From positions 39,184,001 through 39,248,000 of the forward strand of contig NC_092351.1 of the NCBI RefSeq assembly GCF_963676685.1: DNA of 64,000 bases, read 5' to 3'. This DNA is from Mytilus edulis. Lineage: Eukaryota. Positions 32,600 to 64,000 of this stretch are shown here, piece by piece. The notes below the pieces were generated by a model. That model was not told the origin of the DNA, ran no database searches, and worked only from the letters and a program-made list of their open reading frames with translations. The position numbers and the translations under genes are program-made. The number at the start of each line of letters is the position of its first letter. Positions within the stretch are counted from its first letter, which is position 1.

Positions 32600-33175
32600 C
32601 AACATCACTTACAAGAAAAAAATGACTGTTTATACAATATTCGCAAATTGGTTTTCTCTACACACTAAAACCTCAATCTGTCAACAAACACACAACCGTG
32701 TTTTAGTTTGAAATGGCGGCTGTTGTGTACATGCATTGCAAGTTCAGAGGTTAACACGCCAAATATGGCAAAAAGACTCCGCCCATATATTTATATTTTG
32801 TTTTTGTGAAATTTTGTTTAGATTTGCCAAAGCATAATTTTTAAAGATCATAAAAAAAATTATTGTTTGTTTCTTGAAAAATTACAATCAGATGCATATC
32901 ATTAAATTCAGTCAAGTGTTGCAGTCACAATGATCTCTATTTGTTTACAACCAATGTGATTTTCAAACGTAAGTCACATGTCAAAATCTCCTTTGACTTA
33001 TCAATTTACATAAACGTCACGCACCTGCTAAATCATTGATTGGTCAATAAATCCATTCAATCGACAAATCATCCAATCAACGTTCACGATTCGCCCCATA
33101 GCTTTGTCTATGTAGCCTGCATACTGTAGCGTGGGTTATCATTGCGGCATTTCCAGCTTGGGTATAGGTAAGTCT
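32600..33175. promoter_or_regulatory. Putative bidirectional SAP30/HMGB promoter with non-coding first exons (SAP30 donor ~32612, minus strand; HMGB exon 1 ending 33167)
   Basis: YY1 motif AAATGGCGGC at 32711, GC box CTCCGCCC at ~32778, CCAAT/ATTGG boxes at ~32951, ~33040 and ~33072, consensus donor AG|GTAAGT at 33167/33168, minus-strand donor (CACTTAC) at 32606-32612, and local CpG enrichment. Confidence 0.65.
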
Positions 33176-36100
33176 GATCAATTTTAAATTATTTCAAATG
33201 TGAAAAAAATATTTTAATAATTATTATGCAAAAGTAAAAGGATTTATCTTTCATTTTCATTAATTTGGTATAACTTGCGTTATCGGTGGAGGATGCATTT
33301 TGCCTCTGAAAAGTGTTGATTTTGCAGGATTAACACTGTAAGCAACCGCCATTACTTTATGCTTGTGGATGCCATTGCTGTAGTATTTGGATTACTCGCC
33401 CTGATATTTTTTTTCTGGTAAGGTAACATGTCAAAATAAGTAAAGACGTTTTATAATATTGGCATTTGCTACATTTCTGTAAAATTTGAACAACCAGCGT
33501 TACTGAAAAGTTGTCGAAATCGACGATTCATTTTGTCGTTCCTTTGTGAAGAAAGCCGTACACAGCCATCAACGATAAACCAAGGCATTTGCATTGTACA
33601 TAGAGTTACTATATAACCATAGGATTCTATGGGCAATGAAAACGGAAACCTTAAACTTTCTTGGAAACGATTGTAATTGATATTTAGCGAAATAACATCG
33701 AAGAAGGGTTAAATTTAACTGGACTTTCATTCATAGTATTGGAATTTGACTTTGAGAAGGTGCTTTTTGAGGTCGTAGTTTGTCGGCGGCAGAAATATGC
33801 GCCATGTCTGATTTTTACATTGAACAACATAGGGAAAATATCTTGCATAGGATAGCATGGGGAAAAATTTATAATGTTTAAAAAAAAATATTTACTAAAT
33901 TAATATTAACAGTGAAAGTTTAAAATCAATCTTTGTTTGTATTTCAATCTTTTCTTTGTTCCAAAACAGATGGAAACAGGTTTAAAAACATAAATTATGA
34001 ATTTTGAAATATTTTCATAGAGAATGCATAGGAACATCTGTGGGTGATTTTTTATTCCATATTCAAGCAGATTATATGCTTTAGTGGCAAAAATGGAATT
34101 TGATACTAATAATTCTCCCCTGATATTATTTCTTTTTATTGATTTTAAAATCAGACTTGTTGTTAGTGTGAATTTTTATGAAAAGGACAACAACAGCTGA
34201 AGTTTCAATGCAAAAATACTGACTAAATTGTGATGTATTTTTTAAAAATTCATTCAATGTTTTAAATTGCATGATCCTTCAACGTAATAACTTAAGTTCC
34301 AAACAAGAAGTGCGGTTTGTAAATCATCTTGAGATATATAATTCCACTGACTTTCATCATTGAACAGGGTATATTTTTCTCGAAAACTTTTTATGATTGA
34401 AATGTAGCATATTCATTTTCCTTAAGATAAATAGTATTCTAATTCACTGAGATGTTACTTTTATTCCACAAAGTTTTGCCCTTTTAATCTCAACAATATT
34501 CAGCTAAAAAAATCATTTGGACATTTGAATGAATCATTTATGGCAGAGTGTTTCTACTGTAGATCCTGCCATTTTTCAATGAAAGACATCCAATTTTTTA
34601 CTCCCTGATTAGTCCTGCCTAGAAATTCCTTTTTTAGGTTGACTAAATGTATGATATAATACAAAAGACTTGAAAAGGCACTCTTTATTAATAAAAATGA
34701 ACACGGTTACCTTGGACATTTCTACATGAACAGCGCATGGATTTGAAGTTGATGATCATGTATGACGTTCCATCAAAACTCGTCTATCATTCGGTATTTC
34801 GAGAAAAATGATCGTGAATTTCGAAAAAAATAAGTAACTGTGACCAAGTATTGTGATATGAATGTGAAGGAAATCTTATCAAGGAGACACATGCAAGGTC
34901 AGTATTTAATCTAATTTTATTGAATTTTATTTTTAAGGATAAAAATCGGTAAAAAATAAAAATCTGAAAACTGATTATTTCATGAGAAAAAATCCAGTTT
35001 TATAAAGCTCACTGTTAAACCATATTGCTCATCAATTTCGATATAAAAAAAATGGCAAATATTTTCTTCATTATATGAATATTACTGTTTTAAATGGCTC
35101 ATAAAATTATTTTGTAGTATTTTAATCAAAAATTTTGCCACAATTGGCATATTTAATAACATGAAATTGATATTAGATTGTGAAAAATCAAGTATTGCTT
35201 TTGATTATTTCCAAAGATCACAGACAATTATTGTTGATAAAATTCATTAAAGCTCTGAAATGATCTGTAATAAATTGAATAAAGAAAGGTTGAATTCTTT
35301 GTAGAAAAAAAAGGGGGAGGTGTTGTAGATATTATGGTTTTACTCTTGCAAATATTAAGAATTGTTTTATTACAGATTTTAGATGTTTTCACAGAATAAG
35401 TTACCAGATCTTTCACATTCAATTGCAATACTTGAGCACCCATTATTTCATGATCATTTTTCTCGACATACCGAATGAAGGCAGTGAAACGGACATGTTT
35501 TAATAAACTATTGAACATAACTTTTGTTTTTCACTTTGCCACTGGCTGTCAATTTGAGTCACGGGCAATCCATATAATGTTATTAAGACTGTAATAAATT
35601 AGTGATTATCCAGTACTCATTGAGATTAATTCTGACATTCTTGGGATTTCAATTGTCAAGTGACATGGACTGGCCAAATAATATAGAAAAATTAGCAAAA
35701 ATTGATAGTGGAAATATTAACCAAAATATTTTTAGGGGGTCTTGAAATTTTTACCTATTGTTTTTCCGTGAAGAACCAAATATTTGGAAATCTGCTGCAT
35801 TTTTCATGTATTGATACCAATTCCAGATTTTGCCTTTGATGTGAAATTAGTTTTTTTATCAACATGAAATGAAATCTATAATATAAGATGCTGTATGTTG
35901 CTAGCTTTATTAAATATGGGATAAAATATTTAAGTAATGCTAAACTTTTAACCAGCTGTTTACTTGAGCTTAAAAATAACTTTCTTTATAAAGCAGTATC
36001 ATATTCGAGTAGGAATTATCTCCCCTTCACCATGCAATTATACTATGCTTTGTTCGTATGGTATGGAATGAATTAATGTACTGCTCTAATCAGGGCAACA

Positions 36101-36739
36101 GCATAGAACTGATAAAATGTGTTTGTGCAATTTAAAGTATGAATCATTCAAAAATTACTTGATAAATATTCTCCATTTGATGGGTCGTGCCCAACTGGTT
36201 TTATTTTCACTGAGCAGTCACAGCTTTTATAAGATATGGTGCATATTAAATTCAACAATGTCTTGCACAAATGAATTAAACAACCAGGACAGTTACCTGA
36301 CTTTATATTCAAGGTTTCCAAAAGCAATATATTAACTGAATGGTGCACCATATAAACTTTTGTTTACTTTTTGATGCAAATAATAGATTTTTTTTGTTTA
36401 GCCCATTAGTTTTTTTCTTAAAAGGGAGACAGATGTACATTAAAACATCTACAGCATCTATGATTCATTCATTTTGATCATAAAAACTTCTTTAACATTA
36501 GAAAATAATAACTTTTCATTCAGTGTCTGATAATGATCTTGCAGTTATGGCTAACAAATTTGCTCCTTTTTCAAACAAAATGTCCAGTAGAAACTGAAAC
36601 TCAATGGTTAAGACCAGTACCAGCTAAAGTCTTGAGTGCTAAGTAATAGCCTACAATGTTTATATTCAAATGGTTTTTTTTCTTGTAAAGAGTTTAATCA
36701 TTTTATTTCAGAAATATTTCAATTTAATATTCAATCAAG

Positions 36740-38740
36740 ATGGGGAAAAAAGATGGAAAGCCACGTGGACGTATGTCATCATATGCCTTCTTTGTGCAGA
36801 CTTGTAGAGAGGAACACAAGAAAAAGCACCCAACAGAAAAGGTGGTGTTTGCTGAATTCACCAAAAAGTGTGCAGAAAAATGGAAGGTAAAGCACTATTT
36901 AATTAACTTGGAAAAGTGAAATACTTGAAACATTTTGACAACAATTATGTAATCTTGTTCAATTTATAATATGTGACCTTTCTTTCTTTCTTTTCATTTT
37001 ATAAAATGAATCTCCTTTTTTTTCTGTATATAAATAATTTCTCTATTGTAATTTTTTTATGCAAGATTATTTAATTCTGGTGTTTTTTTTATCTTAGGAA
37101 ATGAGTGGCAAGGAAAAGAAAAGATTTGAAGATATGGCAGAGAAAGACAAATCTAGATATGAGGCAGAAATGAAGAATTATGTACCAGGACCAGGGGAGA
37201 AGGTCGGAAGAAAGAAGAGAGAAAAAGATCCTAATGCACCAAAGAGATCACTGTAAGTCTTATATCTGTAATATTTATTATATCCCCACCCAGGAGTAGG
37301 GGTTTCATTGTAATCATATCCGTTGGTACACAATAACTATTTTTGGCCATCCTTTTCACAGAGATGACATGTGCTGTTTGTCGATACTTGAAATTTTTAA
37401 TGTTGAATGAACTTAATATTTCATCTTGCTTTTCTATGATCCTTGCTATTTTAACTGCTTATTTATTCAGTTGTTGAACAGTGAAAAAAAATCTTGTATT
37501 TGGGTACTTTACTCATCTGTTCTACTTTAATTTCAGTTTTCTGATCCTTTGAATTATTCTATAGTTGCTTTATGATTTATCTAGTTATGAAATGGGGAGG
37601 TTTATAAATTGTTAGGAAAAAGTTGTTTTTAATCAAAATCAGGAGTTCAATAGATCATTACTAGTATTTGATGTATAATTACATTTCATTGCAACAAAAA
37701 TACTTACAATGACTTCTAATTTTCTTGCAGTTCTGCATTCTTTTTCTTCTGCAACGAAGAAAGACCAAGTGTAAGGAAAGATCATGGTGATTGGTCGGTA
37801 GCACAGGTTGCCAAGGAGATGGGAAAACGATGGGAGAAAGTAACAGATAGATCAAAATATGAAAAACAGGCAGCTGCAGATAAAATCAGATATGAGCAGG
37901 TAGGTTATAAACCATATAGCTTTTTTACTGGCTTGTTTGTCTTTACAATCAAATTAAGTGGCCAGAGGACCTAAACTGATTTTTTGGGGAAATTTTATAT
38001 AGATTCTACTGGCCTGTTCTTATACGGCCCATGGTAATTGTACAAGTGTAAATTCTTCTGTTAATGAAATTTTCCATCTGTCCCATGAAATTTCAGTAGC
38101 ATTTTTCTATTGATCTACAAATTAAAGCTTACTGAAATTTGTAATCTGCCTACATATTGGCATATCATAATCACTACTTATCAACCCATTTACCAAATAC
38201 TTGTATAATTTTAGATATAATGAGCATGTATGAAATTTTTGTCAAGTTCATATCTGGAGGTTTAAATTGAATATTTTGAAATTTCATGTGAGCATGATAT
38301 CGCGAGGGGCATTTTCGCAGCCAAGCTCATTAGTTTCCTGTTTACCTGGTACAAATCAGAGCTTCTTAAAAAAAAAAACCAGGGTTATGGTGGATAGCCT
38401 GACTGTAATGGGTTCCACTTCTTATTGTACACTTTTACATTTTTAACTTCATGACAATGAATACATATTTTCTTCACATTTCTTTATATCTAGTGATGCA
38501 TATTTACATCCTTTACTTTAGAATTACCTGTTTGCCAAATACTTGAAGAAGGGGATCATTATTACTTATATTAACCAATTCTTCTCTCCACAGGCAATGA
38601 TAATATACAGAGGAGGTGGTGCATCTCCAGCAAAGAAACCAGCAGGACCCCCAGCAAAGAAAGCCAAGCCAGAAAGTGAAGAGGAGGAAGATGACGATGA
38701 TGAAGAAGAGGAGGAGGAGGATGAAGACGATGATGAATAA
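36740..38740 (+). CDS. HMGB: HMGB copy 1 (HMGB1/2-like, two HMG boxes plus acidic tail, 205 aa); exons 36740-36886, 37098-37252, 37731-37899, 38594-38740
   Basis: [31 protein letters not shown]...[30 protein letters not shown]...[17 protein letters not shown]...[20 protein letters not shown]. 618 nt in frame; acceptor at 36711; AATAAA at 39153. Confidence 0.97.
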
Positions 38741-40995
38741 ACACAGGAGATTCTGTATCATGAACAAATGGGGGGGGGGGGGTATCCTGGATCAAGAAAT
38801 GTACAATTTCTGTTTATGTATAGTTGATCATTTGTATATATTGTTCATCTTAGATAATTGTATATTTATCATTGTATATAAAAATCATTATTTTAATCAC
38901 CCCCTCCAAGGGGAAACAATCCTGTCAATTCATTTAACAAAAAAATTTAGAAGCTTTCATTATATTTAATTATTTATGCCTTCAGCGTTGAATTCAAAAA
39001 TTTATCTATGTACATTTAAAGTTTCATTTGTCTCAGACTTTCAAGCTAACAGCTACAATACATTTTTCACTATGAAAGTGCTAAATAATTTTCATCACCA
39101 TTATATTTTAATTATGAAATGTTAATGAATGTCATGTTTAAATAGATTTTATAATAAAACATGAGAAATGTTACTATTTTCTTCTTTGTAGCTCATCTGA
39201 CCCTTAAGTCCATCATGATCTTTTGTCATCACTTGGTGTTCAGCATAAATTTATAGGAGTTAAAATGCCCTAACAGATGTTATTTAGCTAAATTGAAAAA
39301 ATTAACAGCCTTATTTATGTACAAGATAGTGGAAGAGAAGCACTAATTTGTAGGCATCAACCCTCCTCTAACCCTAGACACATGTGAAACTGTACAACAT
39401 AAGAACAAACAATTAAAAATCAGTTGAAAAAGCTTTAACTTCTCAAATGAATACTAATAGAAATACATCTACCAAAAATATCGAGTGGACGTTAACAAGT
39501 ACAACATCTCGACAACAAAAAGACAGATCTGAGAGTATGTCCAGCTACTGAAAGCTAGTTTGAAGCCAATAATAACTAATATAAATAAATCATGCATCTA
39601 AGACTAAATTATCAAGCAGTACACAGCCAACTTCCAATGGATTATGTAAAACAATAAAAACAATATTCAAAGATCTAAGTACAGGGTTGAATTGGTAACC
39701 TTTTAGAATAGGTTTATTTTAAGGATAGATTCTTAATTCCTGGGCTCTGCAAAGTTTGTCACAGCAGTATAAATTCATTTCCACGCATTTGAGAAATCAC
39801 AATCAGAAAATTATAGAAATTTTAACCACAGGTTTAATTTGTATTATAGATTGTTATTTTTTGTTTTGAAGAATATCATGATTATTTCTACTGGTCATAA
39901 TTGCATTGTGCACCGTCTACTTTTGATGCAAATGATTCTTTTCTTTTTTTTTGCTCATTAGATATAAACAAATTTGTTATAAAAGGATAAGTCTCCATGC
40001 CAATCTAGAGTTCTATTTTTATTTAGAATTTGGATTGTTTTACCAATTAAAAAATTGACATTTTTATGCATTATTATTTTAATTTGTTAAGTCACTGTAA
40101 TTGATATGAGAGACTTCTCCATAATTCATACTGAAAATATGAATAATAATGTAACAAGAAAATGTTAAGATTGGAAATGATATGAGTAATAATAATTATC
40201 TTTTGTATTAATTAATGTCAATGCTATCACCTACAGCTAAAGGTTATGACATGTAATTTTAATTGGAGTATTGCTTCAAACTTGTCATATTAATTAAGTA
40301 TTGCCTATGTTTAGTATAAATATTGGTTGTAAACTTATTTCAAAATAGAACACACATATAGAGTAGGACAGTACTTCAAATAGAGACGAGAGAAAGAGAA
40401 AAACAAGTATATAAGTAGTAGGGAACTTTTACAATAAGAGTCATATTGTAATAATTGTATAGACTTTAACCATTGTTTGTAACTTTGGCTTGGAATTAAA
40501 AGATGCACATGAATAAGTTGGATATTTGTAAACTGCAAATAATTATTTTCTGTCTTTGGTGTCTTTTAAACTGAAATGATTTTTTAATGATTTAAAAAAT
40601 AAAATCATGACCCATAACATAAAGGTAGCCAACCAAGCACCATCAGCCTCATTGTTGTTTTTATTTTAGATTTTGGTATAAATACAGCATCTATGTGTCC
40701 TTAGTTTTGTCAGAAAAATATTTTATTAACTTTAGGAAATACTTCCATAAACAATCTTTGACAAAAACTGAATGTAGTCTTGTATGTCAGAAATGTAATG
40801 TCGTGTAAAAGTTGTGATCTTTTCTAAAAACAAAATATCCAGAGGAAATTGAAGATAATGATTCAAAATAGTGGGAGTGCTTACAATGATAAATTTGAGT
40901 ATTCAAATGTTTTACACTATTAGAATTGCCTTCTCTTGCATATATAAACAAATCATTTTATTTTCAGAAATATTTCAAATCAATATTAAATCAAG

Positions 40996-43900
40996 ATGGG
41001 AAGGAAAGATGGAAAGCCACGTGGACGTATGTCATCATATGCCTTCTTTGTGCAGTGTTTTAGAGAGGAACACAAGAAAAAAAATCCAACAGAAAAAGTT
41101 GTGTTTGCTGAATTCACGAAAAAGTGTGCTGAAAAATGGAGGGTACGGTTTTTGATTGCATTATTTTATGGGAATTTACTATAAGGTTTGCCTGTCCCTT
41201 GATTATATCTTCCCTTGGACCAAGGACAACTTTCTACTTAAGGAGTGTTTCCTTCTCTGGGTTTTCTTTAAAAACCTTGTCCAGGCGGTCCATATATTTT
41301 TTTTTGATATTTAGCATGCATGGTGCTGACATGAATCATAATGGTGCTTCCCATAATTCATTATTGAGTTTGAAGCATATTTTTATCTTGCCTCGAGGTC
41401 AATAGGCCTTACTTTTTTATATTTTCGTGTGGAACATTCCATTCTTTGACAGGCTTTTGATATTTGGCGCATGGATGCACCACCTCAAGACAATGTTTTG
41501 ATTTCCATAGAAGAATACCGGTACTATGTACTTGTTATCTTTATATGTCCATCTTAAAACCTAGCATATTCTTTTTTGACATGGCAAGACTTTTTTAATG
41601 CATCTAATTATTTCTCTGAGTCATGCTCTACTCATTCTATAATAAATTGTAAGATATATTGAAAAAATATGGTTTAGATCCTCGCCCTTAATCATATAAT
41701 TCTACCTAGTTGTCTGTTGCGCTGCGAAAGATATGGTAATGGTCTTATGTCTGTCCCAAGCACATCATTACTCAGAGACCGTTTGACAGAAAGCTCTCAT
41801 TCATGGTAGAATTGTTGGCCACCATATCCAGTTGACCATAATATACCAACATTTTGTGGGAGATATGGGTAGTAGGTCTCATTGGGGTCTAAGCCTGACG
41901 CGGTATTGACTGATTTTTTTGTAAGTGTGACTCGTGAAAGTCAAATTATTGTGCATGGAAATGAAGTCTGGCAGGACACCTGGAATTACAAGCAATATTA
42001 TTTCAATGATAAGCGGGATACAGGATCAGATTTTAGGCATTTATTTAAGCAAAAGAGATCAGCCAAAATTTTAAAAATGTACTACCAAGTAATCATGTAC
42101 AATTTACAACTGGGTAAACAATACCTTTAGAGATTTAACAGTCAGAGTCCACTACCTTTAGAGATTTAACAGTCAGAGTCCACTACCTTTAGAGATTTAA
42201 CAGTCAAGTCTACTACTAGTGGTGTCAATAAATCAAAATCAAAACATTCTGATTTCTAACTGTGAACTAGCTTGGACTTGCAATTTGATAGTAGTAATGA
42301 TTTTATTTGTTACAATAGATGAATATTTTTTTGTATGTAAGAATTCTGGTTTTGTTTTGTAGGAAATCAGTGCAAAGGAAAAGAGGAAATATGAAGATAT
42401 GGCAGAGAAAGACAAAGCTAGATATGAGGGAGAAATGCAAAATTACGAGCCAGGACCAGGGGAGAAGGTCGGAAGAAAGAAGAGAGATAAAGATCCCAAT
42501 GCACCAAAGAGATCCCTGTAAGATGAATGTATATGTAGTGTGGCAATATTGGCTAATTTCTGAATCATCTTCCGTTTAAATATTTGAATTACTTGTCCGG
42601 GTTAAAAATTGACAACAGGATAAAAGTGGGAGCCAGGGACTTAAAGGATTATTTGAAAATGCCTGTACCAAGTCAGGAATATGACAGTTCTTGTCCATTT
42701 GTTTTTGATGCGTTTTGTTATTTGAATTTGCCATGTGATTATGGACTTTCCAAATTGATTTTCCTCTAAGTTCAGTATTTTTGTGATTTTACTTTTTAGA
42801 TTCTTAATTTGTAATCATTAAAGTACATAAATAATTGTTGTGTAGTAAGTTTTTCTAGAGCAGCTAGAATTGTCAGTAATGTCTGATTTTTTTAGACACT
42901 TGTGTGACTAGGTGTCTAGGTCAAAAATGTTCTTCATATTTTGGCTTATTGCATTGAACATGGGTAAATCTATTGATTTTGTGGCTAAGCTGACACAAGA
43001 TGAAAAGAATTATTTTTCCTTAGCTTGATGTAAGATCAATCCAATGGCAGTAAATACATAAAATAACTATTTATTTTCTTACAGTTCTGCATTCTTTTTC
43101 TTCTGTAATGAAGAAAGACCAAAAGTAAGGAAAGATCATGGTGATTGGTCGGTAGCGCTAGTAGCCAAGGAGATGGGAAAACGATGGGAGAAACAAACAG
43201 ATAGATCAAAATATGAAAAACAGGCAGCTGCAGATAAAATCAGATATGAGCAGGTAGGTTCAGCGCCACACAACTTTAAACTATTTTTTAAAAGCCAGCT
43301 TGGTTACTTTCTGCTCTGCAATTTCTTTCAATACATTAATGAATTTTATGGCAGTGCATGCATTTCAATTTTCAATAAGGAGGGATATTCTGGAAAAAGT
43401 TATTTGTGAGGAGGGGATGGGTAGGAAATTTGGAGGGTATAACTTTTCTTGTAATCGCTATCCATACAACTTGTAAGAAATGTACTGTAAATTCTGAATG
43501 TTTTTATTGTCGTGAAAAATTTACAGAATAAGGTATTGCAAAAACAAATAACTCCTATTTTGAATTCTGAAAGCATCATTTCATTATGTAGAGCAGGATT
43601 TGCTTACCCTTGCAGAGCACCTGAAATCACCCCCTGTTTTTGGTGGGATTCTTGTTGCTCAGTCTTTAGTTTTCTATGTTAAGTTTTGTCTACTCTTATT
43701 TGTCTCTTTTTCTTTTTTAACCAAGGCGTTGTCAGTTTATTTTTCGACTTGTGAATTTGAAATCACCTTTGGTATCTTTCGCCTCTCTTTTATATACAAC
43801 ATTTACTGGAATTGCAATAATTAATATCATTTTTGACCTTTTTTCAAAAATTCCAATAATGAATACATGCAGGAAATTACAGTTAAGATTTGAAATTAAT

Positions 43901-46770: not shown

Positions 46771-46832
46771 GATTGCATATATAAACAAATCATTTTATTT
46801 TCAGAAATATTTCAAATCAATATTAAATCAAG

Positions 46833-52534: not shown

Positions 52535-53782
52535 TAAATTGTTTATCAGGTCAAGATCTATCTGCCCTGAAATTTTCAGATAGATTAAAGAACACGTTGT
52601 AACGTTGCTGCCCCTTAAATGCTAATTTCAAGGAAATTTTGCTGTTTTTATATGACCACAAAAAACCACAAAATTGAAAATTTTTTGGTCATATATTGGT
52701 ATCACATTGGCGTCGGCGTCCCAAGACTTGGTTTTCGCATTATAACTTTAGTATAAGTGAATAGAAATCTATGAAATTTAAACACAAGGGTTATGGCCAT
52801 AAAAGGAAGGTTGTGATTGATTTTGGAAGTTTTGGTCCCAACAGTTTGGGAATTAGGGGCCAAAAAGGGCCCAAATAAGGATTTTCTTGGTTTTCGCACT
52901 TACTTTCGTTTAAAGTAAATAGAAGTCTATGAAATTTTGACACAAGGTTTATGACCACTAAAGGAAGGTTGGGAGTGTTGGTCCCAACAGTTTAGGAATT
53001 AGGAGCCAAAAAAGGGCCATAATAAGCATTATTCTTGGTTTTCGCACAATAACTTTAGTATAAGTAAATAGAAATCAATGAAATTTAAACACAAGGTTTA
53101 TGAACACAAAAGGAAGTTTGGGAGTTGAGGTCCCAACAGTTTAGGAATTAGGGGCACAAATAAGCATTTTTAACCGGATTTTTGAGACAAAAATGTCGGT
53201 TATTGATTTGGGGATGTACGGCGGGCAGTCGGGCGGGCGGCAATCGAATGTTGTCTGTGCATTAACTCATGAACCGTTCAACCAAAGCTTTTAAAATTTT
53301 AATATGTTGTTACTGACAACTAAATGAAGGTCAAGTTCAATAATGGCGATTTTGACTTTTACCGTTCAGGAGTTAAGGTTCTTGAAAGATTGAAAAATGT
53401 TTTTTCCAGTCGTGTCCGTGCATTGACGCATGAACTGTTCTACCAAAGTTTCCCAAATTTTAATATGTTGGTACTGATGACAAAATGGAGGTCAAGTTCA
53501 ATAATGACGATTTTTACTTTTACCGTTCAGGAGTTAAGGTTCTTGAAAGATTGAAAAATGGTTTTTCCAGTCGTGTCCGTGCATTGACGCATGAACTGTT
53601 CTACCAAAGTTTCCCAAATTTTAATATGTTGGTACTGATGACAAAATGGAGGTCAAGTTCAATAATGACGATTTTTACTTTTACCGTTCAGGAGTTATGG
53701 TTCTTGAAAGAATGAAAAAAGTTTGTATATATAAACAAATCATTTTATTTTCAGAAATATTTCAAATCAATATTAAATCAAG

Positions 53783-56700
53783 ATGGGAAGGAAAGATGGA
53801 AAGCCACGTGGACGTATGTCATCATATGTCTTCTTTGTGCAGTGTTTTAGAGAGGAACACAAGAAAAAAAATCCAACAGAAAAAGTTGTGTTTGCTGAAT
53901 TCTCGAAAAAGTGTGCTGAAAAATGGAGGGTACGGTTTTTGATTGCATTATTTTATGGGAAATTTACTATAAGGTTTGCCTGTCCCTTGATTTATCTTCC
54001 CTTGGACCAAGGACAAATTTCTACTTAAGGAGTGTTTCCTTCTCTGGGTTTTCTTTAAAAACCTTGTCCAGGAGGTCCATAATTTTTTTTTTTATATATT
54101 TAGCATGCATGGTGCTGACATAAATCATAATGGTGCTTCCCATAATTCATTATTGACTTTGAAGCATATTTTTATCTTGCCTCGAGGTCAATAGGCCTTA
54201 CATTTTTACATTTTCGTGTGGAACATTCCATTCTTTGACGGGCTTTTGATATTTGGCGCATGGATGCACCACCTCAAGACAATGTGTTGATTTCCATGGA
54301 AGAATACTATGTACTTGTTATCTTTATATGTCCATCTTAAAACCTCACATATTCTTATTTGACATGGCAAGACTTTTTTAATGCATCTAATTATTTATCT
54401 AAGTCGTGCCCTACTCATTCTATAATAAATTGTAAGATATATTGAAAAAATATGGTTTAGATCCTCGCCCTTAATCATATAATTCTACCTAGTTGTCTGT
54501 TGCGCTGCGAAAGATATAGTAATGGTCTTATGTCTGTCCCAAGCACATCATTACTCAGAGACCGTTTGACAGAAAGCTCTCATTCATGGTAGGATTGTTG
54601 GCCACCATGTCCAGTTGACCATAATATACCAACATTTTGTGGGAGATATGGGTAGTAGGTCTCATTGGGGTCTAAGCCTGACGCGGTATTGGCTGATTTT
54701 TTTGTAAGTGTGACTCGTGAAAGTCAAATTATTGTGCATGGAAATGGAAATGAAGTCGGGCAGGAAACATGGAATTACAAGCAATATTATTTCAATAATC
54801 AAAACATTCTGATTTCAAACTGTGAACTTGCTTAGACTTGCAATTTGTTAGAAGTAATGATTTCATTTGTTACAATAGATGAATAATATTTTGTTCGTAA
54901 GACTCCTGGTTTTGTTTTGTAGGAAATCAGTGCAAAGGAAAAGAGGAAATATGAAGATATGGCAGAGAAAGACAAAGCTAGATATGAGGGAGAAATGCAA
55001 AATTACGAGCCAGGACCAGGAGAGAAGGTTGGAAGAAAGAAGAGAGATAAAGATCCCAATGCACCAAAGAGATCCCTGTAAGATAAATGCATATGTAGTG
55101 TGGCAATATTGGCTAATTTCTGAAGCATCTTCCGTCTAAATATTTGAATTACTTGTCCGGGTTAAGAATTGACAACAGGATAAAAGTGGGAGCCAGGGAC
55201 TTAAAGGATTATTAGATTGTTAATTTGTAATCATTAAAGTACATAAATGATTGTTAAAGTAAGACATTTTCACAATTCAATGTGGGTATTGCAATATATT
55301 AATTTCATGTCATGCTTTGTTGTTCATTGTTGTTTATTTTGGTACATATCAATATCAACATATAATTTCTCTTTAACCTCCTTTCCCTTAATACTGCATT
55401 ATACTGGCACAAATCAAGTCTTGTGGATTATAAGTTTTTCTAGAGCAGCTTGAATTGTCAGTAATGTCTGATTTTGTAGACACTTGTGTGACTAGGTGTC
55501 TAGGGCAAAAACGTTCTTTATATTTTAGCTTATTGCATTGAACATGGGTAAATCTATTGATTTTGTGGCTGAGCTGACATAAGGCCAAAAAAAATTACAT
55601 ATCTCTGTTTCCTGCTGCCAAGGCAAATAAATCAGGGTCGGAAGGTCGGGTTTTTTTTTTTTTATTATTTTTTTATTTTTGCACTCCCTGTCAGATTTGC
55701 AGTCGGTTAAATGTCATGTTTGGTTAGGGTCCTGTACCCTAAAATGATCTAATCTCTTAAAAGAAGCTTAAATTGAATAATCCTCCCAGTGCCGACATTT
55801 TTTAAACCTTAATTGTAGCACATTTGTGCTGGGAGCAGCCATTTTGATTGTTTGGGTATAGTAAAATACGGATCGGGATCAGACAGGAAACGAATTTTTC
55901 CGGACCAGAAACAAATTTTTTCCGGATTTGAATAAAAAGATCTAGGGTCGGGGTAGGTCGGGAAACAGGAAACAGACATATATTTTTTTTTGGCCTAAGA
56001 TGAAAAGAATCCCAAGGTAAATTATTTTTCTTTAGCTTGATGTAAGATCAATCCAATGGCAGTAAATACATAAAAATAACTATTTATTTTCTTACAGTTC
56101 TGCATTCTTTTTCTTCTGTAATGAAGAAAGACCAAAAGTAAGGAAAGATCATGGTGATTGGTCGGTAGCGCTAGTAGCCAAGGAGATGGGAAAACGATGG
56201 GAGAAACAAACAGATAGATCAAAATATGAAAAACAGGCAGCTGCAGATAAAATCAGATATGAGCAGGTAGGTTCAGCACCATACAACTTTAAACTATTTT
56301 TTAAAAGCCAGCTTGGTTACTTTCTGCTCTGCAATTTCTTTCAATACATTAATGAATTTTATGGCAGTGCATGCATTTCAATCTTCAATAAGGAGGGCTA
56401 TTCTGGAAAAAGTTATTAGTGAGGAAGGAATGGGTAGGAAATTTGGAGGGTATAATTTTTTCTTGTACTCGCTATCCATACAACTTGTAAGAAATGTACT
56501 GTAAATTCTGAATGTTTTTATTGTCGTGAAAAATTTACAGAATAAGGTATTGCAAAAACAAATAACTCCTATTTTAAATTCTGAAAGCATCATTTCATTA
56601 TGTAGAGCAGGATTTGCTTACCCTTGCAGAGCACCTGAAATCACCCCCTGTTTTTGGTGGGATTCTTGTTGCTCAGTCTTTAGTTTTCTATGTTATGTTT

Positions 56701-57290
56701 TGTCTACTCTTATTTGTCTCTTTTTCTTTTTTAACCAAGGCGTTGTCAGTTTATTTTTCGACTTGTGAATTTGAATGTACCTTTGGTATCTTTCGCCTCT
56801 CTTTTATATACAGCATTTACTGGAATTGCAATAATTAATATCATTTTTGACCTTTTTTCAAAAATTCCAATAATGAATACATGCAGGAATTTACAGTTAA
56901 GATTTGAAATTTATGCCAACTCCTACTAGATGAATTTTCCATTTTTTGTATCTCTCTAAAAAAAAATGAACTTGTTACAACAGCAACATAGAAACAACCA
57001 TTTAACATAATGACATTTTAATGATAAGGTAATTTCCATGTCTTGTGAAGGACTACATTCAGTGGTAAAATTTCTTCTGAATTCTTGTTACTCCTCATTT
57101 TTCCATGTGGATACTTAAATTGATCTGATTCTTCTACCCACAGGCAATGGCAAAATACAGGGGAGGTGGTGGTGGATCTCCAGCAAAGAAACCTGCAGGA
57201 CCCCCAGCAAAGAAAGCTAAGCCAGAGAGTGAAGAAGAGGATGATGATGATGAAGAAGATGAGGAAGACGACGAAGAAGATGATGAATAA
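53783..57290 (+). CDS. HMGB: HMGB copy 4 (205 aa, intact); exons 53783-53929, 54923-55077, 56098-56266, 57144-57290
   Basis: Same exon lengths and open frame; [13 protein letters not shown]; AATAAA at 57725. Confidence 0.9.
55583..55995. mobile_element. 413-bp PIF/Harbinger-like MITE in an intron of HMGB copy 4
   Basis: TAA|GGCCAAAAAAAA...TTTTTTTTGGCC|TAA. The empty site GACATAAGATG is present in copy 5 (~61820). Confidence 0.9.
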
Positions 57291-59824
57291 GCACAAAAGA
57301 TTCTGTATCATGAACAATTGGGGGGTATCCTGGATCAAGAAATGTACAATTTCTGTTATGTATAGTTGATCATTTGTATATATTGTTCATCTTAGATGAT
57401 TGTATATTTATCATTGTACATAAAATCATTATTTTATTCATCCCATCTGAGGGGAAACAATCCTGTCATCTTACTTTAGAACAAAATTTAAGTAGTTTTT
57501 ATGATATTATAATTATTTATACATTTTCATGATGAATTTAAAATTTAACTGTGTAAAACATTTTAAGTTTCATCAGCTTCACAGACTTGCAGGCTAACAG
57601 CTACAATATTTTCTTTTTGCTATGGAGCAATGTAAAGGGAATGACTGAAAGTGCTGTATTTTTCATCACCATTTTTGTTTTAATCATGAAATGTCAATGA
57701 ATGTCATGTTTAAATAGATTTTATAATAAAACATATTTTAACTTGCTTAATTCTTTTTTTTAACCAAACCTGGCACCAAGGCAATTTTACTGAAAACGCT
57801 TATTAACTTTTATTAGGAGTGATTGCCTATAAACGACTGTTTTAACAAACTATTGCCTATTGTCTTCAAAACTATAATAGGTAGAAGTTCTTAGTGGGTT
57901 TGATAAGGCCTTTATCAAACAAGAGACTTGCAAATTTGAATGAAGTGTGAATAATTTGTACCATTATGGAGAAATGTGGACTTGTCACAGGAACTATGTT
58001 ATTGAAATCCAGCTCAGCAGATGTGGTATGATTGCCAATAAGACAAAACTCCACAAGAGACCAACTGGCAGAAATTAACAGCAATAGGTCACTATTTAGC
58101 CTTCAACAATAAGAAAAGTCTATACTTCATAGTTGGCTTTAAAAGGCCCAGAAATCAAATGTAAAACAAACTAACGGCCTTATAAATGTACACAAAAAAA
58201 TGATGAAACAAGAAATATGTAACACAGCAACAAATGACAACTACTGAATTACAGGCTCTTGACATGGGATAGGCACATACAAACAGAATGTGACTGGTGT
58301 AACAGTACATCATAATAGTCTAGCCAACTTAGCATAAATTTCACCCTAACCTTGAAGAAAATGATAAGGGAGATAACTCTGCAAAAAAGACAGAAATATC
58401 AGTGAAAATTGATACAAAATTATAATTTAAACCTTGAAGGGCCTTCCATTTAACAGAATGTATTGATTCTTGATATTTTAGCCATCTTTAGAGAATAAAA
58501 AACAACTATAAAGGTGTTATCATATTTTTAGCTCGCCTGGCTAAGTGAGCTTTTCCCATCACTTGTGTCCGTCGTCGTTAACTTTTACAAAAATCTTCTC
58601 CTGAAACTACTGGGCCAAATTAAACCAAACTTGGCCAAAATCATCATTGGGGTGTCTAGTTTAAAAAATGTGTCCAGTGACCCGGCCAACAATCCAAGAT
58701 GGCCACCAGGACTAAAAATAGAACAGACACATAGTGGTAAAATATACATTTTGGCTTCTCTGAAACCAAAGCAAATCTTACAAGGGGTTAAATTGTTTAT
58801 CAGGTCAAGATCTATCAGCCCTGAAATTTTCAGATAGATTGGAGAACCCATTGTAACGTTGCTGCCCCTTAAATGCTTATATGACCACAAAAAACCACAA
58901 AATTGAAAAAATTTTGGTCATATATTGGTATCACATTGGCGTCGGCGTCCCAAGACTTTTGGTTTTCGCATTATAACTTTAGTATAAGTGAATAGAAATC
59001 TATGAAATTTAAACACAAGGTTTATGACCATAAAAGGAAGGTTGTGATTGATTTTGGAAGTTATGGTCCCAACAGTTTGGGAATTAGGGGCCAAAAAGGG
59101 CCCAAATAAGGATTTTCTTGGTTTTCGCACTTACTTTAGTTTAAGTAAATAGAAATCTATGAAATTTTGACACAAGGTTTATGACCACTAAAGGAAGGTT
59201 GGGAGTGTTGGTCCCAACAGTTTAGGAATTAGGAACCAAAAAAGGGCCATAATAAGCATTATTCTTGGTTTTCGCACAATAACTTTAGTATAAGTAAAAT
59301 AGAAATCAATGAAATTTAAACACAAAAGGAAGTTTGGGAGTTGAGGTCCCAACAGTTTAGGAATTGGGGGCACAAATAAGCATTTTTAACCGGATTTTTG
59401 TGACAAAAATGTCGGTTATTGATTTGGGGATGGGCGGCGGATTCAATCAAATGATGTCTGTACATAAACTCATGAACCGTTCAACCAAAGCTTTTAAAAT
59501 TTTAATATGTTGTTACTGACAACTAAATGAAGGTCAAGTTCAATAATGGCGATTTTGACTTTTACCGTTCAGGAGTTATGGTTCTTGAAAGATTGAAAAA
59601 TAGTTTTTCCAGTCGTGTCCGTGCATTTATGCATGAACTGTTCTACCAAAGCTTCCCAAATTTTAATATGTTGTTACTGATGACAAAATGGAGGTCAAGT
59701 TTAATAATGACGATTTTGACTTTTACCGTTCAGGAGTTATGGTTCTTGAAAGATTGAAAAAAGATTGCATATATAAACAAATTATTTTATTTTCAGAAAT
59801 ATTTCAAATCAATATTAAATCAAG

Positions 59825-62711
59825 ATGGGAAGGAAAGATGGAAAGCCACGTGGACGTATGTCATCATATGTCTTCTTTGTGCAGTGTTTTAGAGAGGAAC
59901 ACAAGAAAAAAAATCCAACAGAAAAAGTTGTGTTTGCTGAATTCTCGAAAAAGTGTGCTGAAAAATGGAGGGTACGGTTTTTGATTGCATTATTTTATGG
60001 GAAATTTACTATAAGGTTTGCCTGTGCCTTGATTATATCTTCTCTTGGACCAAGGACAACTTTCTACTTAAGGAGTGTTTCCTTCTCTGGGTTTTCTTTA
60101 AAAACCTTGTCCAGGCGGTCCATATTTTTTTTTTATATTTAGCATGCATGGTGCTGACATAAATCATAATGGTGCTTCCCATAATTCATTATTGACTTTG
60201 AAGCATATTTTTATCTTGCCTCGAGGTCAATAGGCCTTACTTTTTTACATTTTTGTGTGGAACATTCCATTCTTTGACAGGCTTTTGATATATGGTGCAT
60301 GGATGCACCACCTCAAGAAAAAGTGTTGATTTCCATAGAAGAATACCGGTACTATGTACTTGTTATCTTTATATGTCCATCTTAAAACCTCACATATTCT
60401 TATTTGACATGGCAAGACTTTTTTAATGCATCTAATTATTTCTCTAAGTCGTGTCCTACTCATTCTATAATAAATTGTAAGATATATTGAAAAAATATGG
60501 TTTAGATCCTCGCCCTTAATCATATAATTCTACCTAGTTGTCTGTTGCGCTGCGAAAGATATAGTAATGGTCTTATGTCTGTCCTAAGCACATCATTACT
60601 CAGAGACCGTTTGACAGAAAGCTCTCATTCATGGTAGGATTGTTGGCCACCATGTCCAGTTGACCATAATATACCAACATTTTGTGGGAGATATGGGTAG
60701 TAGGTCTCATTGGGGTCTAAGCCTGACGCGGTATTGGCTGATTTTTTTGTAAGTGTGACTCGTGAAAGTCAAATTATTGTGCATGGAAATGGAAATGAAG
60801 TCGGACAGGAAACATGGAATTACAAGCAATATTATTTCAATGATAAGCGGGATACAGGATCAGATTTTAGGCATTTATTTAAGCAAAAGAGATCAGCCAA
60901 AGTTTTAAAAATGTACTACCAAGTAATCATGTACAATTTACAACTGGGTAAACAATACCTTTAGAGATTTAAAAGTCAGAGTTCACTACCTTTAGAGATT
61001 TAACAGTCAGAGTCCACTACTAGTGGTTCAATAAATCAGAATCAAAACATTCTGATTTCAAACTGTGAACTTGCTTAGACTTGCAATTTGATAGAAGTAA
61101 TGATTTTATTTGTTACAATAGATGAATATTATTTTGTATGTAAGAATTCTGGTTTTGTTTTGTAGGAAATCAGTGCAAAGGAAAAGAGGAAATATGAAGA
61201 TATGGCAGAGAAAGACAAAGCTAGATATGAGGGAAAAATGCAAAATTACGAGCCAGGACCAGGGGAGAAGGTTGGCAGAAAGAAGAGAGATAAAGATCCC
61301 AATGCACCAAAGAGATCCCTGTAAGATAAATGCATATGTAGTGTGGCAATATTGGCTAATTTCTGAATCATCTTCTGTCTAAATATTTGAATTACTTGTC
61401 CGGGTTAAAAATTGACAACAGGATAAAAGTGGGAGCCAGGGACTAAAAGGATTTTTAGATTCTTAATTTGTAATCATTTAAAGTACATAAATGATTGTTA
61501 AAGTAAGACATTTTCACAATTCAATGTGGGTATTGTAATATATTAATTTCATGTCATGCTTTGTTGTTCATTGTTGTTTATTTTGGTACATATAAATATC
61601 AACATATAATTTCTCTTTAACCTCCTTTCCCTTAATACTGCATTATACTTGCACAAATGAATTCTTGTGGATTATAAGTTTTTCTAGAGCAGCTTGAATT
61701 GTCAGTAATGTCTGATTTTGTAGACACTTGTGTGACTAGGTGTCTAGGTCAAAAATGTTCTTCATATTTTGGCTTATTGCATTGAACATGGGTAAATCTA
61801 TTGATTTTGTGGCTGAGCTGACATAAGATGAATCAATCCCAAGAAAAATAATTTTTCTTTAGCTTGATGTAAGATCAATCCAATGGCAGTAAATACATAA
61901 AATAACTATTTATTTTCTTACAGTTCTGCATTCTTTTTCTTCTGTAACGAAGAAAGACCAAAAGTAAGGAAAGATCATGGTGATTGGTCGGTAGCGCTAG
62001 TAGCCAAGGAGATGGGAAAACGATGGGAGAAACAAACAGATAGATCAAAATATGAAAAACAGGCAGCTGCAGATAAAATCAGATACGAGCAGGTAGGTTC
62101 AGCGCCACACAACTTTAGACTATTTTTTAAAAGCCACCTTGGTTACTTTCTGCTCTGCAATTTCTTTCAATACATTAATGAATTTTATGGCAGTGCAGTG
62201 AATTTGAATGTACCTATGGTATCTTTCGCCTCTCTTTTATATACAGCATTTACTGGAAATGCAATAATTAATATCATTTTTGACCTTTTTTCAAAAATTC
62301 CAATAATGATCAATAATGAATACATGCAGGAATTTACAGTTAAGATTTGAAATTTATGCTAACTCCTACTAGATGAATTTTCCATTTTTTGTATCTCTCC
62401 TAAAAAATGAACTCGTTACAACAGCAACATAGGAACAACTATTTAACATAATGACATTTTAATGATAAGGTCATTTCCATGTCTTGTGAAGGACTACATT
62501 TAGTGGTAAATTTCTTCTGAATTCCATGTGGATACTTTAATTGATCTGATTTTTCTCCCCACAGGCAATGGCAAAATACAGGGGAGGTGGTGGTGGATCT
62601 CCAGCAAAGAAACCTGCAGGACCCCCAGCAAAGAAAGCCAAGCCAGAGAGTGAAGAAGAGGATGATGATGATGAAGAAGAGGAGGAAGACGACGAAGAAG
62701 ATGATGAATAA
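59825..62711 (+). CDS. HMGB: HMGB copy 5 (205 aa, intact); exons 59825-59971, 61166-61320, 61924-62092, 62565-62711
   Basis: Same exon lengths and open frame; E73K; AATAAA at 63145. Confidence 0.9.
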
Positions 62712-64000
62712 ACACAAAGATTCTGTATCATGAACAATTGGGGGGTATCCTGGATCAAGAAATGTACAATTTCTGTTATGTATAGTTGATCATTTGTATA
62801 TATTGTTCATCTTAGATGATTGTATATTTATCATTGTACATAAAATCATTATTTTATTCATCCCATCTGAGGGGAAACAATCCTGTCATCTTACTTTAGA
62901 ACAAAATTTAAGTAGTTTTTATGATATTATAATTATTTATACATTTTCATGATGAATTTAAAATTTAACTGTGTAAAACATTTTAAGTTTCATCGACTTC
63001 ACAGACTTGCAGGCTAACAGCTACAATATTTTCTTTTTGCTATGGAGCAATGTAAAGGGAATGACTGAAAGTGCTGTATTTTTCATCACCATTTTTGTTT
63101 TAATCATGAAATGTCAATGAATGTCATGTTTAAATAGATTTTATAATAAAACATATTTTAACTTGCTTAATTCTTTTTTTAACCAAACCTGGCACCAAGG
63201 CAATTTTACTGAAAACGTTTATTAACTTTTATTAGGAGTGATTGCCAATAAACGACTGTTTTAACAAACTATTGCCTATTGTCTTCAAAACTATAATAGG
63301 TAGAAGTTCTTAGTGGGTTTGATCAGGCCTTTGTCAAACAAGAGCCTTGCAAATTTGAATGAAGTGTGAATAATTTGTACCATTATGGAGAAATGTGGAC
63401 TTGTCACAGGAACTATGTTATTGAAATCCAGCTCAGCAGATGTGGTATGATTGCCAATGAGACAACACTCCACAAGAGACCAACTGGCAGAAATTAACAG
63501 CTAAAGGTCACTGTTTAGCCTTCAACAATAAGAAAAGTGCATACTGCATAGTCGGCTTTAAAAGGCCCAGAAATCAAATGTAAAACAAACTAACGGCCTT
63601 ATAACTGTATAAATGTACACAAAAAATAATGAAACAAGAAATATGTAACACAGCAACAAATGACAACTACTGAATTGCAGGCTCTTGACATGGGATAGGC
63701 ACATACATACAGAATGTGACTGGGTTAAACATGTAAGCAGGATCCCGAACCTGTGACTGGTGTAACAGTACATCATAATATTCCAGTCAATCTAGCATAA
63801 ATTTCACCCTATCCTTGAAGTAATTGCAACAGAGGATTTTAAGTTTTAATCTTTAGCATTATATCCAAAATTAAACCAAAATATACACAGAAAAAAGTCC
63901 CATAAAATCTAACTTGAGGAAAACTAAAATTTAAAATTCCTATGGAGATTTGCATTGATAAGGGAGATGACTCTGCAAAAAAGGCAGAAATATCAATGAA

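What the first reader, a model, noticed from the sequence alone, without database searches (positions are those of the whole stretch)
33120..63150. Five intact HMGB coding cassettes but only one visible promoter and leader exon: candidate shared-leader, gene-cassette choice system
Seen: the only promoter-like region and non-coding exon (donor AG|GTAAGT at 33167) lie upstream of copy 1. Similarity upstream of copy 2 covers only the distal part of intron 1 (39900-40967 vs 36350-36711), and I see no copy of exon 1 in any spacer. Copies 2-5 all keep the exon-2 acceptor (TTTTATTTTCAG|AAATATTTC), an identical 28-nt distance to the ATG, four in-frame exons, a 3'UTR and AATAAA. The introns of copies 1 and 2 have diverged heavily, yet copy 2 has no stop or frameshift, so it has probably been expressed for a long time without its own exon 1. 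Inference: one promoter transcribes through the array, and exon 1 is spliced to one of five whole-gene cassettes, chosen by competition between splicing and polyadenylation. This is the mirror image of protocadherin/UGT1 variable-first-exon loci. Identical intron phases would also allow chimeric inter-copy isoforms. Alternatives are new or TE-derived promoters, trans-splicing, or silent copies 3-5.
Basis: partly seen in the sequence, partly recalled or inferred. Interest (0 to 1): 0.9.

Follow-up and report, generated by a model that had tools for sequence, protein, structure and literature searches.

The report
Mussel HMGB gene array, one leader
A blue-mussel chromosome carries five intact, selectively maintained copies of the chromatin protein gene HMGB in a row. 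Only the first copy has a promoter-side leader exon, so the others probably borrow it or start at a small TATA box of their own; this is a neat case of a known kind, and RNA data were not available to test it.

Summary
The window is Mytilus edulis chromosome DNA. It carries five intact 205-aa two-box HMGB genes in tandem, each with four coding exons, identical intron phases, its own 3'UTR and AATAAA. The putative non-coding exon 1 and its CpG-rich upstream region are single-copy in the whole 1.37-Gb genome.

Copy 2 arose from an old duplication whose 5' breakpoint lies in intron 1. About 300 nt of distal intron 1 are still alignable. Both lineages occur in five Mytilus species. Copies 3-5 are young (2-4% intron divergence). 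They keep only 32 nt upstream of exon 2, joined to a 3'-truncated dispersed repeat element. Coding differences among copies 2-5 are 12 synonymous to 7 non-synonymous (p=3e-5), so these copies are not decaying.

The shared-leader reading is only indirectly supported:
- RefSeq names the M. edulis copy-2 protein "isoform X1", with the copy-1 protein taking the next accession numbers.
- In M. californianus both cassettes are isoforms of one gene, and a third isoform is an exact exon-3/exon-4 chimera.

Against it:
- M. galloprovincialis and M. trossulus name the two as separate genes.
- M. edulis copies 3-5 are separate genes.
- A TATATAAA sits 27 nt upstream of exon 2 in copies 2-5 only.

Precedents exist (ANG/RNASE4, HOXC4-6).

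The parts
31800..33119 (+). CpG-rich, promoter-like region upstream of copy 1. It has three CCAAT/ATTGG boxes at 32951, 33039 and 33073. It is single-copy in the genome.
   Evidence: CpG counts are 12-17 per 400 nt against a window median of 3. No second copy was found. Promoter function is inferred, not shown.
33120..33167 (+). Putative non-coding exon 1 (leader). The donor is AG|GTAAGT after 33167, and there is no ATG inside. The 5' end is uncertain.
   Evidence: The sequence was read. It is unique in the window, spacers and genome. No RNA evidence was available.
33168..36711 (+). Intron 1 of copy 1. Its last ~300 nt (36407-36711) are homologous to the stretch upstream of copy 2.
36712..39175 (+). 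Copy 1, the canonical HMGB. Exons are 36712-36886 (ATG at 36740), 37098-37252, 37731-37899 and 38594-38740 (stop). The 3'UTR runs to the AATAAA at 39154. The product equals P0135 (XP_071126163/4).
39176..40967 (+). Spacer between copies 1 and 2. It contains an old dispersed SINE-like repeat at ~39358-39730 and unique AT-rich DNA. The remnant of distal intron 1 lies at 40655-40967. A TATATAAA lies at 40941-40948.
40968..44735 (+). Copy 2. Exons are 40968-41142 (ATG at 40996), 42363-42517, 43085-43253 and 44130-44276. AATAAA is at 44712. The product equals P0132 (XP_071126160-2, named 'isoform X1').
46390..46772 (+). Dispersed ~0.9-kb element with internal 161-bp repeats, truncated at its 3' end and joined to the 32-nt intron-1 remnant (46773-46804, with TATATAAA at 46778). 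Equivalent junctions lie upstream of copy 4 (element 53167-53722) and copy 5 (about 59471-59764).
46805..50535 (+). Copy 3. Exons are 46805-46979 (ATG at 46833), 48112-48266, 48882-49050 and 49931-50077. AATAAA is at 50513. The product equals P0126 (XP_071126165).
53755..57750 (+). Copy 4. Exons are 53755-53929 (ATG at 53783), 54923-55077, 56098-56266 and 57144-57290. AATAAA is at 57726. The product equals P0123 (XP_071126168).
59797..63170 (+). Copy 5, the last of the array. Exons are 59797-59971 (ATG at 59825), 61166-61320, 61924-62092 and 62565-62711. AATAAA is at 63146. The product equals P0122 (XP_071126167).

Best explanation
This is a tandem array of HMGB paralogues in Mytilus edulis, built in two steps.

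Step 1. An old tandem duplication had its 5' breakpoint inside intron 1. It copied the distal intron, the four coding exons and the 3'UTR, but not the promoter or the leader exon. The resulting second cassette has been kept as a distinct, conserved paralogue across the genus.

Step 2. In the M. edulis species complex, unequal exchange multiplied this cassette. One breakpoint lay 32 nt upstream of exon 2. The other lay in a repeat element downstream of the gene.

All five cassettes are functional genes. The leaderless cassettes are most likely expressed, at least in part, from the copy-1 promoter. Transcription that runs past the copy-1 poly(A) site would let the exon-1 donor, or occasionally an internal donor, pair with the retained exon-2 acceptor of a downstream cassette. 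Each such mRNA would end at that cassette's own poly(A) signal.

This is reasonably indicated for copy 2 and is open for copies 3-5. It is alternative splicing and polyadenylation between paralogous whole-coding-sequence cassettes, as at ANG/RNASE4. A regulated five-way choice device has not been demonstrated.

Shown here: the anatomy, the uniqueness of exon 1, the selection on the copies, and the age of the duplication. Inferred: the route of transcription.
For: Anatomy and intactness of the five cassettes.

Exon 1 is unique in the window, spacers and genome.

The 5' breakpoint lies in intron 1, with colinear homology of the last ~300 nt.

The copy-2 exon-2 acceptor is conserved (16 of 17 nt plus the AG) although dS is ~0.5 and the introns are otherwise unalignable. 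The 28-nt 5'UTR part of exon 2 is 25/28 identical.

Purifying selection:
- omega is ~0.25 for copy 1 against copies 2-5, and 0.07-0.23 among copies 2-5.
- Variable sites among copies 2-5 are 12 synonymous to 7 non-synonymous, p=3e-5 against neutrality.

Both lineages are present in M. californianus, M. coruscus, M. trossulus, M. galloprovincialis and M. edulis.

Copy-2-type full-length open frames occur on ~1.1-kb JGI/Logan contigs (P0134, P0129). This implies spliced mRNA.

RefSeq naming:
- The M. edulis copy-2 protein is 'isoform X1' (XP_071126160-2), and copy 1 takes the next numbers (163-164).
- No other M. edulis isoform of 115-364 aa exists in the database.
- M. californianus has X1 (copy-1 type), X2 (copy-2 type) and X3, a chimera that switches between residues 100 and 126, which is the exon 3/4 junction.

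Exon 1 and the exon-2 leader contain no upstream ATG.
Against: No RNA junction was examined.

RefSeq names copy 1 and copy 2 as different genes in M. galloprovincialis and M. trossulus, and names M. edulis copies 3-5 as separate single-isoform genes.

Gene merging by an annotation pipeline can come from mis-mapped spliced reads between near-identical paralogues.

A TATATAAA lies at -27..-20 of the exon-2 start in copies 2-5 and is absent from copy 1.

Each cassette has a well-conserved poly(A) signal with a U-rich downstream region, which should limit read-through.

The proximal acceptor of copy 1 should win most of the competition for the exon-1 donor. Leader splicing over 13-27 kb to copies 3-5 would have to pass two to four poly(A) sites.
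Confidence: 0.5

Rival explanations
1. Copies 2-5 are autonomous genes with a minimal TATA-type core promoter. The TATATAAA 27 nt upstream of 'exon 2' would direct initiation in the first bases of that exon, giving mRNAs with a ~25-nt 5'UTR and no leader exon. The 32 nt carried along by the young duplications would then be exactly the core promoter. This may coexist with some leader splicing.
For: TATATAAA is present at 40941, 46778, 53728 and 59770 and absent at the matching place in copy 1. TATAWAWR occurs only 0.83 times per kb on this strand, so about 1% chance of one in a 10-nt window. Homology among copies 2-5 begins 5 nt upstream of this box. The CpG-rich repeat element abuts it in copies 3-5. 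RefSeq treats copies 3-5 in M. edulis, and copy 2 in two other species, as separate genes.
Against: The motif was found post hoc in a 68% A+T genome, and it could equally be a branch-point or polypyrimidine context. The acceptor (pyrimidine tract plus CAG) is as well conserved between copy 1 and copy 2 as the working acceptors of introns 2-4, which is expected if it is still spliced. TATA-to-CAG spacing of 25 nt is short for an initiator at the CAG. M. edulis and M. californianus annotations link copy 2 to copy 1.
Confidence: 0.25
2. Copies 2-5 have acquired new first exons and promoters in the spacers. For copy 2 this would be unique spacer DNA or the SINE-like repeat. For copies 3-5 it would be the repeat elements. 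Each new exon would be spliced to the retained exon-2 acceptor.
For: The acceptor is retained. CCAAT clusters lie in spacers at 39566-39691, 45814-45936 and 58838-58935. The repeat upstream of copies 3-5 is CpG-rich. RefSeq names these copies as separate genes.
Against: Copy 2 and copies 3-5 share nothing upstream beyond 32 nt, so two independent promoter gains would be needed. The spacer before copy 2 is CpG-poor with no island. The 161-bp-repeat element is a short non-autonomous dispersed repeat with no known promoter, and it holds upstream ATGs that open a 98-104-aa frame overlapping the start codon.
Confidence: 0.12
3. Copies 3-5 are transcriptionally silent young duplicates. Their intact frames reflect youth and gene conversion from an expressed copy 2.
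For: They are only 2-4% diverged in introns. No Logan/JGI transcript-derived protein identical to copies 3-5 is in the database. Mussel genomes show much presence/absence variation (mentioned in PMC12488463).
Against: By my count from the codon table, changes private to copies 3, 4 and 5 are about 11 synonymous to 5 non-synonymous, where about 81% non-synonymous is expected under neutrality. Copy 3 alone shows 3 non-synonymous to 7 synonymous changes. The copy-3-5 type is also annotated in M. galloprovincialis and M. trossulus.
Confidence: 0.08
4. Exon 1 is a spliced leader added in trans to the exon-2 acceptors.
For: Gene clusters that appear to share a first exon can be an artefact of trans-spliced leaders, as in ctenophores (PMC8527503).
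Against: Exon 1 is single-copy in the genome, whereas spliced-leader genes are multi-copy. To my knowledge spliced-leader trans-splicing has not been described in molluscs.
Confidence: 0.01

Closest known systems
ANG / RNASE4 locus of human and mouse (PMC12602997; listed in PMC2568002)
   Same: Two paralogous genes made by tandem duplication share promoters and 5' non-coding exons. Each complete coding cassette has its own 3' end, and splicing plus polyadenylation decides which protein is made.
   Different: There each cassette is a single coding exon and there are two of them. Here each cassette has four coding exons and there are up to five. Sharing is proven there by cDNA and is only inferred here.
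HOXC4/HOXC5/HOXC6 shared 5' non-coding exon, and other promoter-sharing pairs such as CPNE1/RBM12 (PMC2568002)
   Same: One promoter and leader exon is spliced to one of several downstream complete coding regions.
   Different: The HOX genes are old, diverged paralogues and CPNE1/RBM12 are unrelated. In those cases the downstream genes also have their own promoters.
Read-through ('conjoined', tandem-chimeric) transcripts between neighbouring genes (from my own knowledge: Akiva 2006, Parra 2006, Prakash 2010)
   Same: Transcription passes the upstream poly(A) site, and donors of the upstream gene pair with acceptors of the downstream gene. M. californianus isoform X3 (copy-1 exons 2-3 joined to copy-2 exons 4-5) has this form.
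   Different: Most conjoined transcripts are rare by-products. Here the downstream gene has no leader exon of its own, so read-through could be its normal route.
Clustered protocadherin and UGT1A loci (variable first exons, constant 3' exons)
   Same: Only the general idea of choosing one member of a tandem array per transcript.
   Different: In those loci every variable exon has its own promoter and all share constant coding exons. Here there is no constant coding region, and at most one promoter is shared. The loci are not homologous, and the mechanism is promoter choice rather than acceptor and poly(A) choice.
Vertebrate HMGB1/2/3 genes
   Same: Two HMG boxes plus an acidic tail. From my own knowledge they also have five exons with a non-coding exon 1 and the ATG in exon 2.
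   Different: Vertebrate paralogues are dispersed genes, each with its own promoter. The mussel copies 2-5 have shifted or lost one box-A cysteine.

Membership tests
HMGB proteins (HMG-box family, two boxes plus acidic tail) | Two HMG-box domains | tested here: met
   PF00505 and PF09011 each match in two stretches, with E-values of 1e-29 to 1e-33, in all five products.
HMGB proteins (HMG-box family, two boxes plus acidic tail) | C-terminal run of Asp/Glu | tested here: met
   All five translations end in a run of about 20 D/E residues.
Promoter- and leader-sharing gene cassettes (ANG/RNASE4, HOXC4-6 type) | A single 5' non-coding exon and promoter for several downstream complete coding regions | tested here: inconclusive
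   Exon 1 has no second copy in the window, spacers or genome. Other start sites in the spacers, or at the TATA box at -27, cannot be excluded from sequence.
Promoter- and leader-sharing gene cassettes (ANG/RNASE4, HOXC4-6 type) | mRNAs that join the shared exon to each cassette | not testable with these tools
Only indirect evidence exists: RefSeq isoform naming in M. edulis and M. californianus.
Promoter- and leader-sharing gene cassettes (ANG/RNASE4, HOXC4-6 type) | Each cassette has its own acceptor and poly(A) signal | tested here: met
Variable-first-exon clusters (protocadherin, UGT1A) | Shared constant coding exons downstream of the variable units | tested here: not met
   Each cassette is a complete coding sequence with a stop and AATAAA. 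The array ends after copy 5 with no common exons.
Spliced-leader trans-splicing | Multi-copy spliced-leader RNA gene | tested here: not met
   The exon-1 region has one match in the 1.37-Gb genome.
Retrocopies / processed pseudogenes | Loss of introns | tested here: not met
   All copies keep three internal introns. No intronless HMGB copy exists anywhere in the genome.

The most novel reading that the evidence does not exclude
One promoter and one 48-nt leader exon serve all five HMGB cassettes. Each primary transcript is resolved to a single cassette by competition between leader splicing over 3.5 to 27 kb and the successive poly(A) sites. In-phase inter-cassette chimeras form a further layer. 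This would be a multi-exon, whole-coding-sequence cassette choice that expanded recently in the M. edulis complex and yields HMGB variants with different box-A cysteines.
Probability: 0.15. Interest if true: 0.7.

Novelty: new member of a known kind. Interest (0 to 1): 0.45.

Why it matters
It is a clean natural example of how a duplicate that lost its promoter and leader exon can survive for a long time and then multiply. If the leader is shared, the locus shows duplication turning directly into alternative isoforms of one transcription unit. Those isoforms would be whole-protein variants of a major chromatin and alarmin protein that differ in a redox-sensitive cysteine. If instead the 32-nt remnant is a TATA core promoter, it shows how little sequence a duplicate needs to stay alive. 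Either outcome can be checked with existing mussel RNA data. It also warns annotators, because four Mytilus annotations treat the same locus in two different ways.

Tried and rejected
After that decline I sent one protein query by reference from inside that stretch. No human-likeness had been stated. Later DNA searches used other stretches.

The ~1.1-kb transcript-like contigs behind P0134 and P0129, which would show the 5' leader, could not be read.

It returned only distant HMGB loci L001-L003.

4. I tried a retrocopy trick, because a processed pseudogene would preserve the leader-exon 2 junction. The genome has none.

5. The expression table of a mussel RNA-seq paper is aggregated by gene name, so it is not copy-specific. 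A search for the accession numbers in papers found nothing.

Spliced coding sequences were assembled only inside scripts, for translation and dN/dS. Database proteins identical to the models were used by id.

7. I rejected promoter calling by motif. CCAAT clusters and CpG-rich stretches also occur in repeats.

8. CpG depletion is no use as a proxy for read-through, because the whole window is depleted (median observed/expected 0.29).
Full report
WHAT IS THERE

The window is an A+T-rich animal sequence (about 32% G+C). It lies at G000:C8:39184001-39248000 of a 1.37-Gb genome. The five gene products are identical, residue for residue, to Mytilus edulis RefSeq proteins, so this is blue-mussel DNA.

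| Copy | Database id | RefSeq accession |
|---|---|---|
| 1 | P0135 | XP_071126163/164 |
| 2 | P0132 | XP_071126160-162 |
| 3 | P0126 | XP_071126165 |
| 4 | P0123 | XP_071126168 |
| 5 | P0122 | XP_071126167 |

The exon-2 acceptor motif occurs five times, each 28 nt before an ATG. Four-exon models give five open 618-nt coding sequences of 205 aa. All have GT/AG introns and identical phases. All have two HMG boxes and an acidic tail.

Every copy has a 3'UTR of about 415-435 nt ending in AATAAA. The last 93 aligned columns up to that signal are 89% identical between copy 1 and copy 2. Identity then falls to 40%. The genome contains exactly these five copies and no retrocopy.

EXON 1

It lies in the most CpG-rich stretch of the locus. 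The exon-1/promoter stretch has no second copy in the window, in any spacer (scores at the shuffled mean), or in the genome. That it is the true first exon remains an inference.

HISTORY OF THE ARRAY

Copy 1 against copies 2-5 gives dS of 0.45-0.53 and dN/dS of about 0.25. Their introns do not align (p-distance 0.42-0.54).

The last ~300 nt before exon 2 are an exception. They are colinear between copy 1 (36407-36711) and copy 2 (40655-40967), in blocks of 64-93% identity. At the 3' side homology ends just after the poly(A) signal. So the first duplication copied distal intron 1 through the 3' end and left out the promoter and exon 1.

A protein tree places a copy-1 type and a copy-2 type in M. 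californianus, M. coruscus, M. trossulus, M. galloprovincialis and M. edulis. The duplication therefore predates these species (the copy-2 clade has support 80/71 and shares clear signature residues).

Copies 2-5 are 94-97% identical over gene and spacer, with 2-4% intron divergence. Upstream, copies 3-5 share only 32 nt with copy 2. Beyond that lies a dispersed ~0.9-kb element with internal 161-bp repeats. That element has at least 839 genomic candidates at 95-97% identity. Its 5' end is intact here and its 3' part is missing. The simplest reading is unequal exchange between a point 32 nt upstream of exon 2 and this element in the 3' flank of the ancestral copy 2. This agrees with the earlier scan note s1-837042. 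Downstream of copy 5 the high-identity unit ends near 63723 and no further cassette follows.

ARE THE LEADERLESS COPIES FUNCTIONAL?

Among copies 2-5 there are 19 variable coding sites, 12 synonymous and 7 non-synonymous. About 81% non-synonymous is expected under neutrality (binomial p=3e-5). Pairwise dN/dS is 0.07-0.23.

The copy-2 type has stayed intact in five species. Full-length copy-2-type open frames also sit on ~1.1-kb JGI/Logan contigs (P0134, P0129). A 205-aa frame on such a contig can only come from spliced RNA, because the gene spans 3.3 kb. So at least the copy-2 lineage is expressed, and copies 3-5 are very probably expressed too.

HOW ARE THEY TRANSCRIBED?

The single metagenome scan returned nothing from mussels.

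Indirect evidence for a shared leader:
1. The copy-2 acceptor (pyrimidine tract plus CAG, 16 of 17 nt) and the 28-nt 5'UTR segment (25/28) are conserved against a background of saturated intron divergence. This implies exon 2 is still spliced to something upstream.
2. RefSeq calls the M. edulis copy-2 protein 'isoform X1', and the copy-1 protein holds the next two accession numbers. A second database search found no other M. edulis protein of 115-364 aa that could be the missing isoform. So copy 1 and copy 2 are most likely one annotated gene with five transcripts. With no chimeric protein among them, the link would be a shared non-coding exon.
3. In M. californianus the copy-1 type, the copy-2 type and a third protein are isoforms X1, X2 and X3 of one gene. 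X3 matches X1 at every discriminating residue up to 100 and X2 at every one from 126 on. That is exons 2-3 of cassette 1 joined to exons 4-5 of cassette 2.
4. Neither exon 1 nor the exon-2 leader has an upstream ATG.

Evidence against, or for rivals:
1. RefSeq names copy 1 and copy 2 as different genes in M. galloprovincialis and M. trossulus. It names copies 3-5 of M. edulis as separate genes without isoforms.
2. Pipeline models between near-identical paralogues can rest on ambiguous spliced reads. Exon 2 shows no coding difference among copies 2-5 before codon 16, so short junction reads cannot tell these copies apart.
3. Copies 2-5, but not copy 1, carry TATATAAA at -27 to -20 from the exon-2 start. 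It lies inside the 32 nt that the young duplications preserved. The motif class occurs 0.83 times per kb, so about 1% chance at that place, but I noticed it post hoc. It could direct initiation in the first bases of 'exon 2'.
4. All poly(A) signals look competent. The proximal copy-1 acceptor should capture most leader donors.
5. Splicing exon 4 of one copy to exon 2 of the next would shift the frame and stop after 31 codons (frame seen). Simple terminal-exon skipping is therefore not a productive route.
6. Promoter calling by motif is uninformative, because CCAAT clusters occur at seven places including the spacers.
7. Trans-splicing is unlikely, because exon 1 is single-copy (compare PMC8527503).

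COMPARISON WITH KNOWN SYSTEMS

Sharing of a promoter and 5' non-coding exons by different downstream coding regions is documented for more than 20 human gene pairs. These include HOXC4/5/6 and the paralogues ANG/RNASE4 (PMC2568002; locus structure in PMC12602997). Read-through chimeras between neighbours are also well known. The protocadherin/UGT1A comparison fails on its defining feature, shared constant coding exons. The mussel locus would be a multi-exon, multi-cassette member of the ANG/RNASE4 kind.

VERDICT

- Leader sharing is plausible for copy 2, at about even odds or slightly better.
- It is unresolved for copies 3-5.
- A regulated five-way choice is unproven, at about 0.15.

The case is tidy and testable but not a new kind of system. 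Interest is 0.45.

LEFT OUT BY INSTRUCTION

Spliced coding sequences were built only inside scripts.

Noticed in passing
window 40996-41142, 46833-46979, 53783-53929, 59825-59971 (exon 2 of copies 2-5) against 36740-36886: In box A the canonical 'QTC' of copy 1 reads 'QCF' in copies 2, 4 and 5, so the cysteine is shifted by one residue. It reads 'QSF' in copy 3, so the cysteine is lost. The second box-A cysteine is kept in all copies. The copy-2 type of M. californianus and M. trossulus also reads 'QSF'.
   Followed up: partly
window 14045-15060, 30252-30952, 31551-31703(-), 46390-46772, 53167-53722, 59471-59764; full copies at L007:1891-2831 and L008:1892-2828: A dispersed ~0.9-kb non-autonomous element has about five internal 161-bp repeats. 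It has at least 839 genomic candidates at 95-97% identity on all chromosomes and is unusually CpG-rich. It served as a breakpoint for the HMGB amplification.
   Followed up: partly
window 39070-39162 and the equivalent ends of copies 2-5: The last ~90 nt of the 3'UTR up to AATAAA are 89% identical between the old paralogues, although silent sites are about 50% diverged. This is probably a conserved regulatory block. A second AATAAA overlaps the stop codon in all five copies.
   Followed up: no
window 36407-36711 against 40655-40967: Distal intron 1 keeps colinear conserved blocks up to 300 nt from the acceptor. The other introns keep only 16-33 nt next to their exons. This could be an intronic enhancer, a splicing element or an internal promoter. 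Copies 3-5 lack it.
   Followed up: no
window 39358-39730: An old SINE-like dispersed repeat lies in the spacer between copies 1 and 2. It has at least 4273 genomic candidates at ~78% identity and carries a CCAAT cluster.
   Followed up: no
window 55077-56098 (intron 3 of copy 4); 62092-62565 (intron 4 of copy 5); 42122-42216 and 60956-61020: The young copies differ by indels. Intron 3 of copy 4 has ~400 extra nt. Intron 4 of copy 5 lacks ~400 nt. A 31-bp tandem repeat in intron 2 varies in copy number.
   Followed up: no
proteins P0001 and P0144 (older M. edulis annotation): Two earlier gene models of this locus are mis-predicted. One reads into intron 2. The other uses the wrong frame for exons 2-3.
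   Followed up: partly
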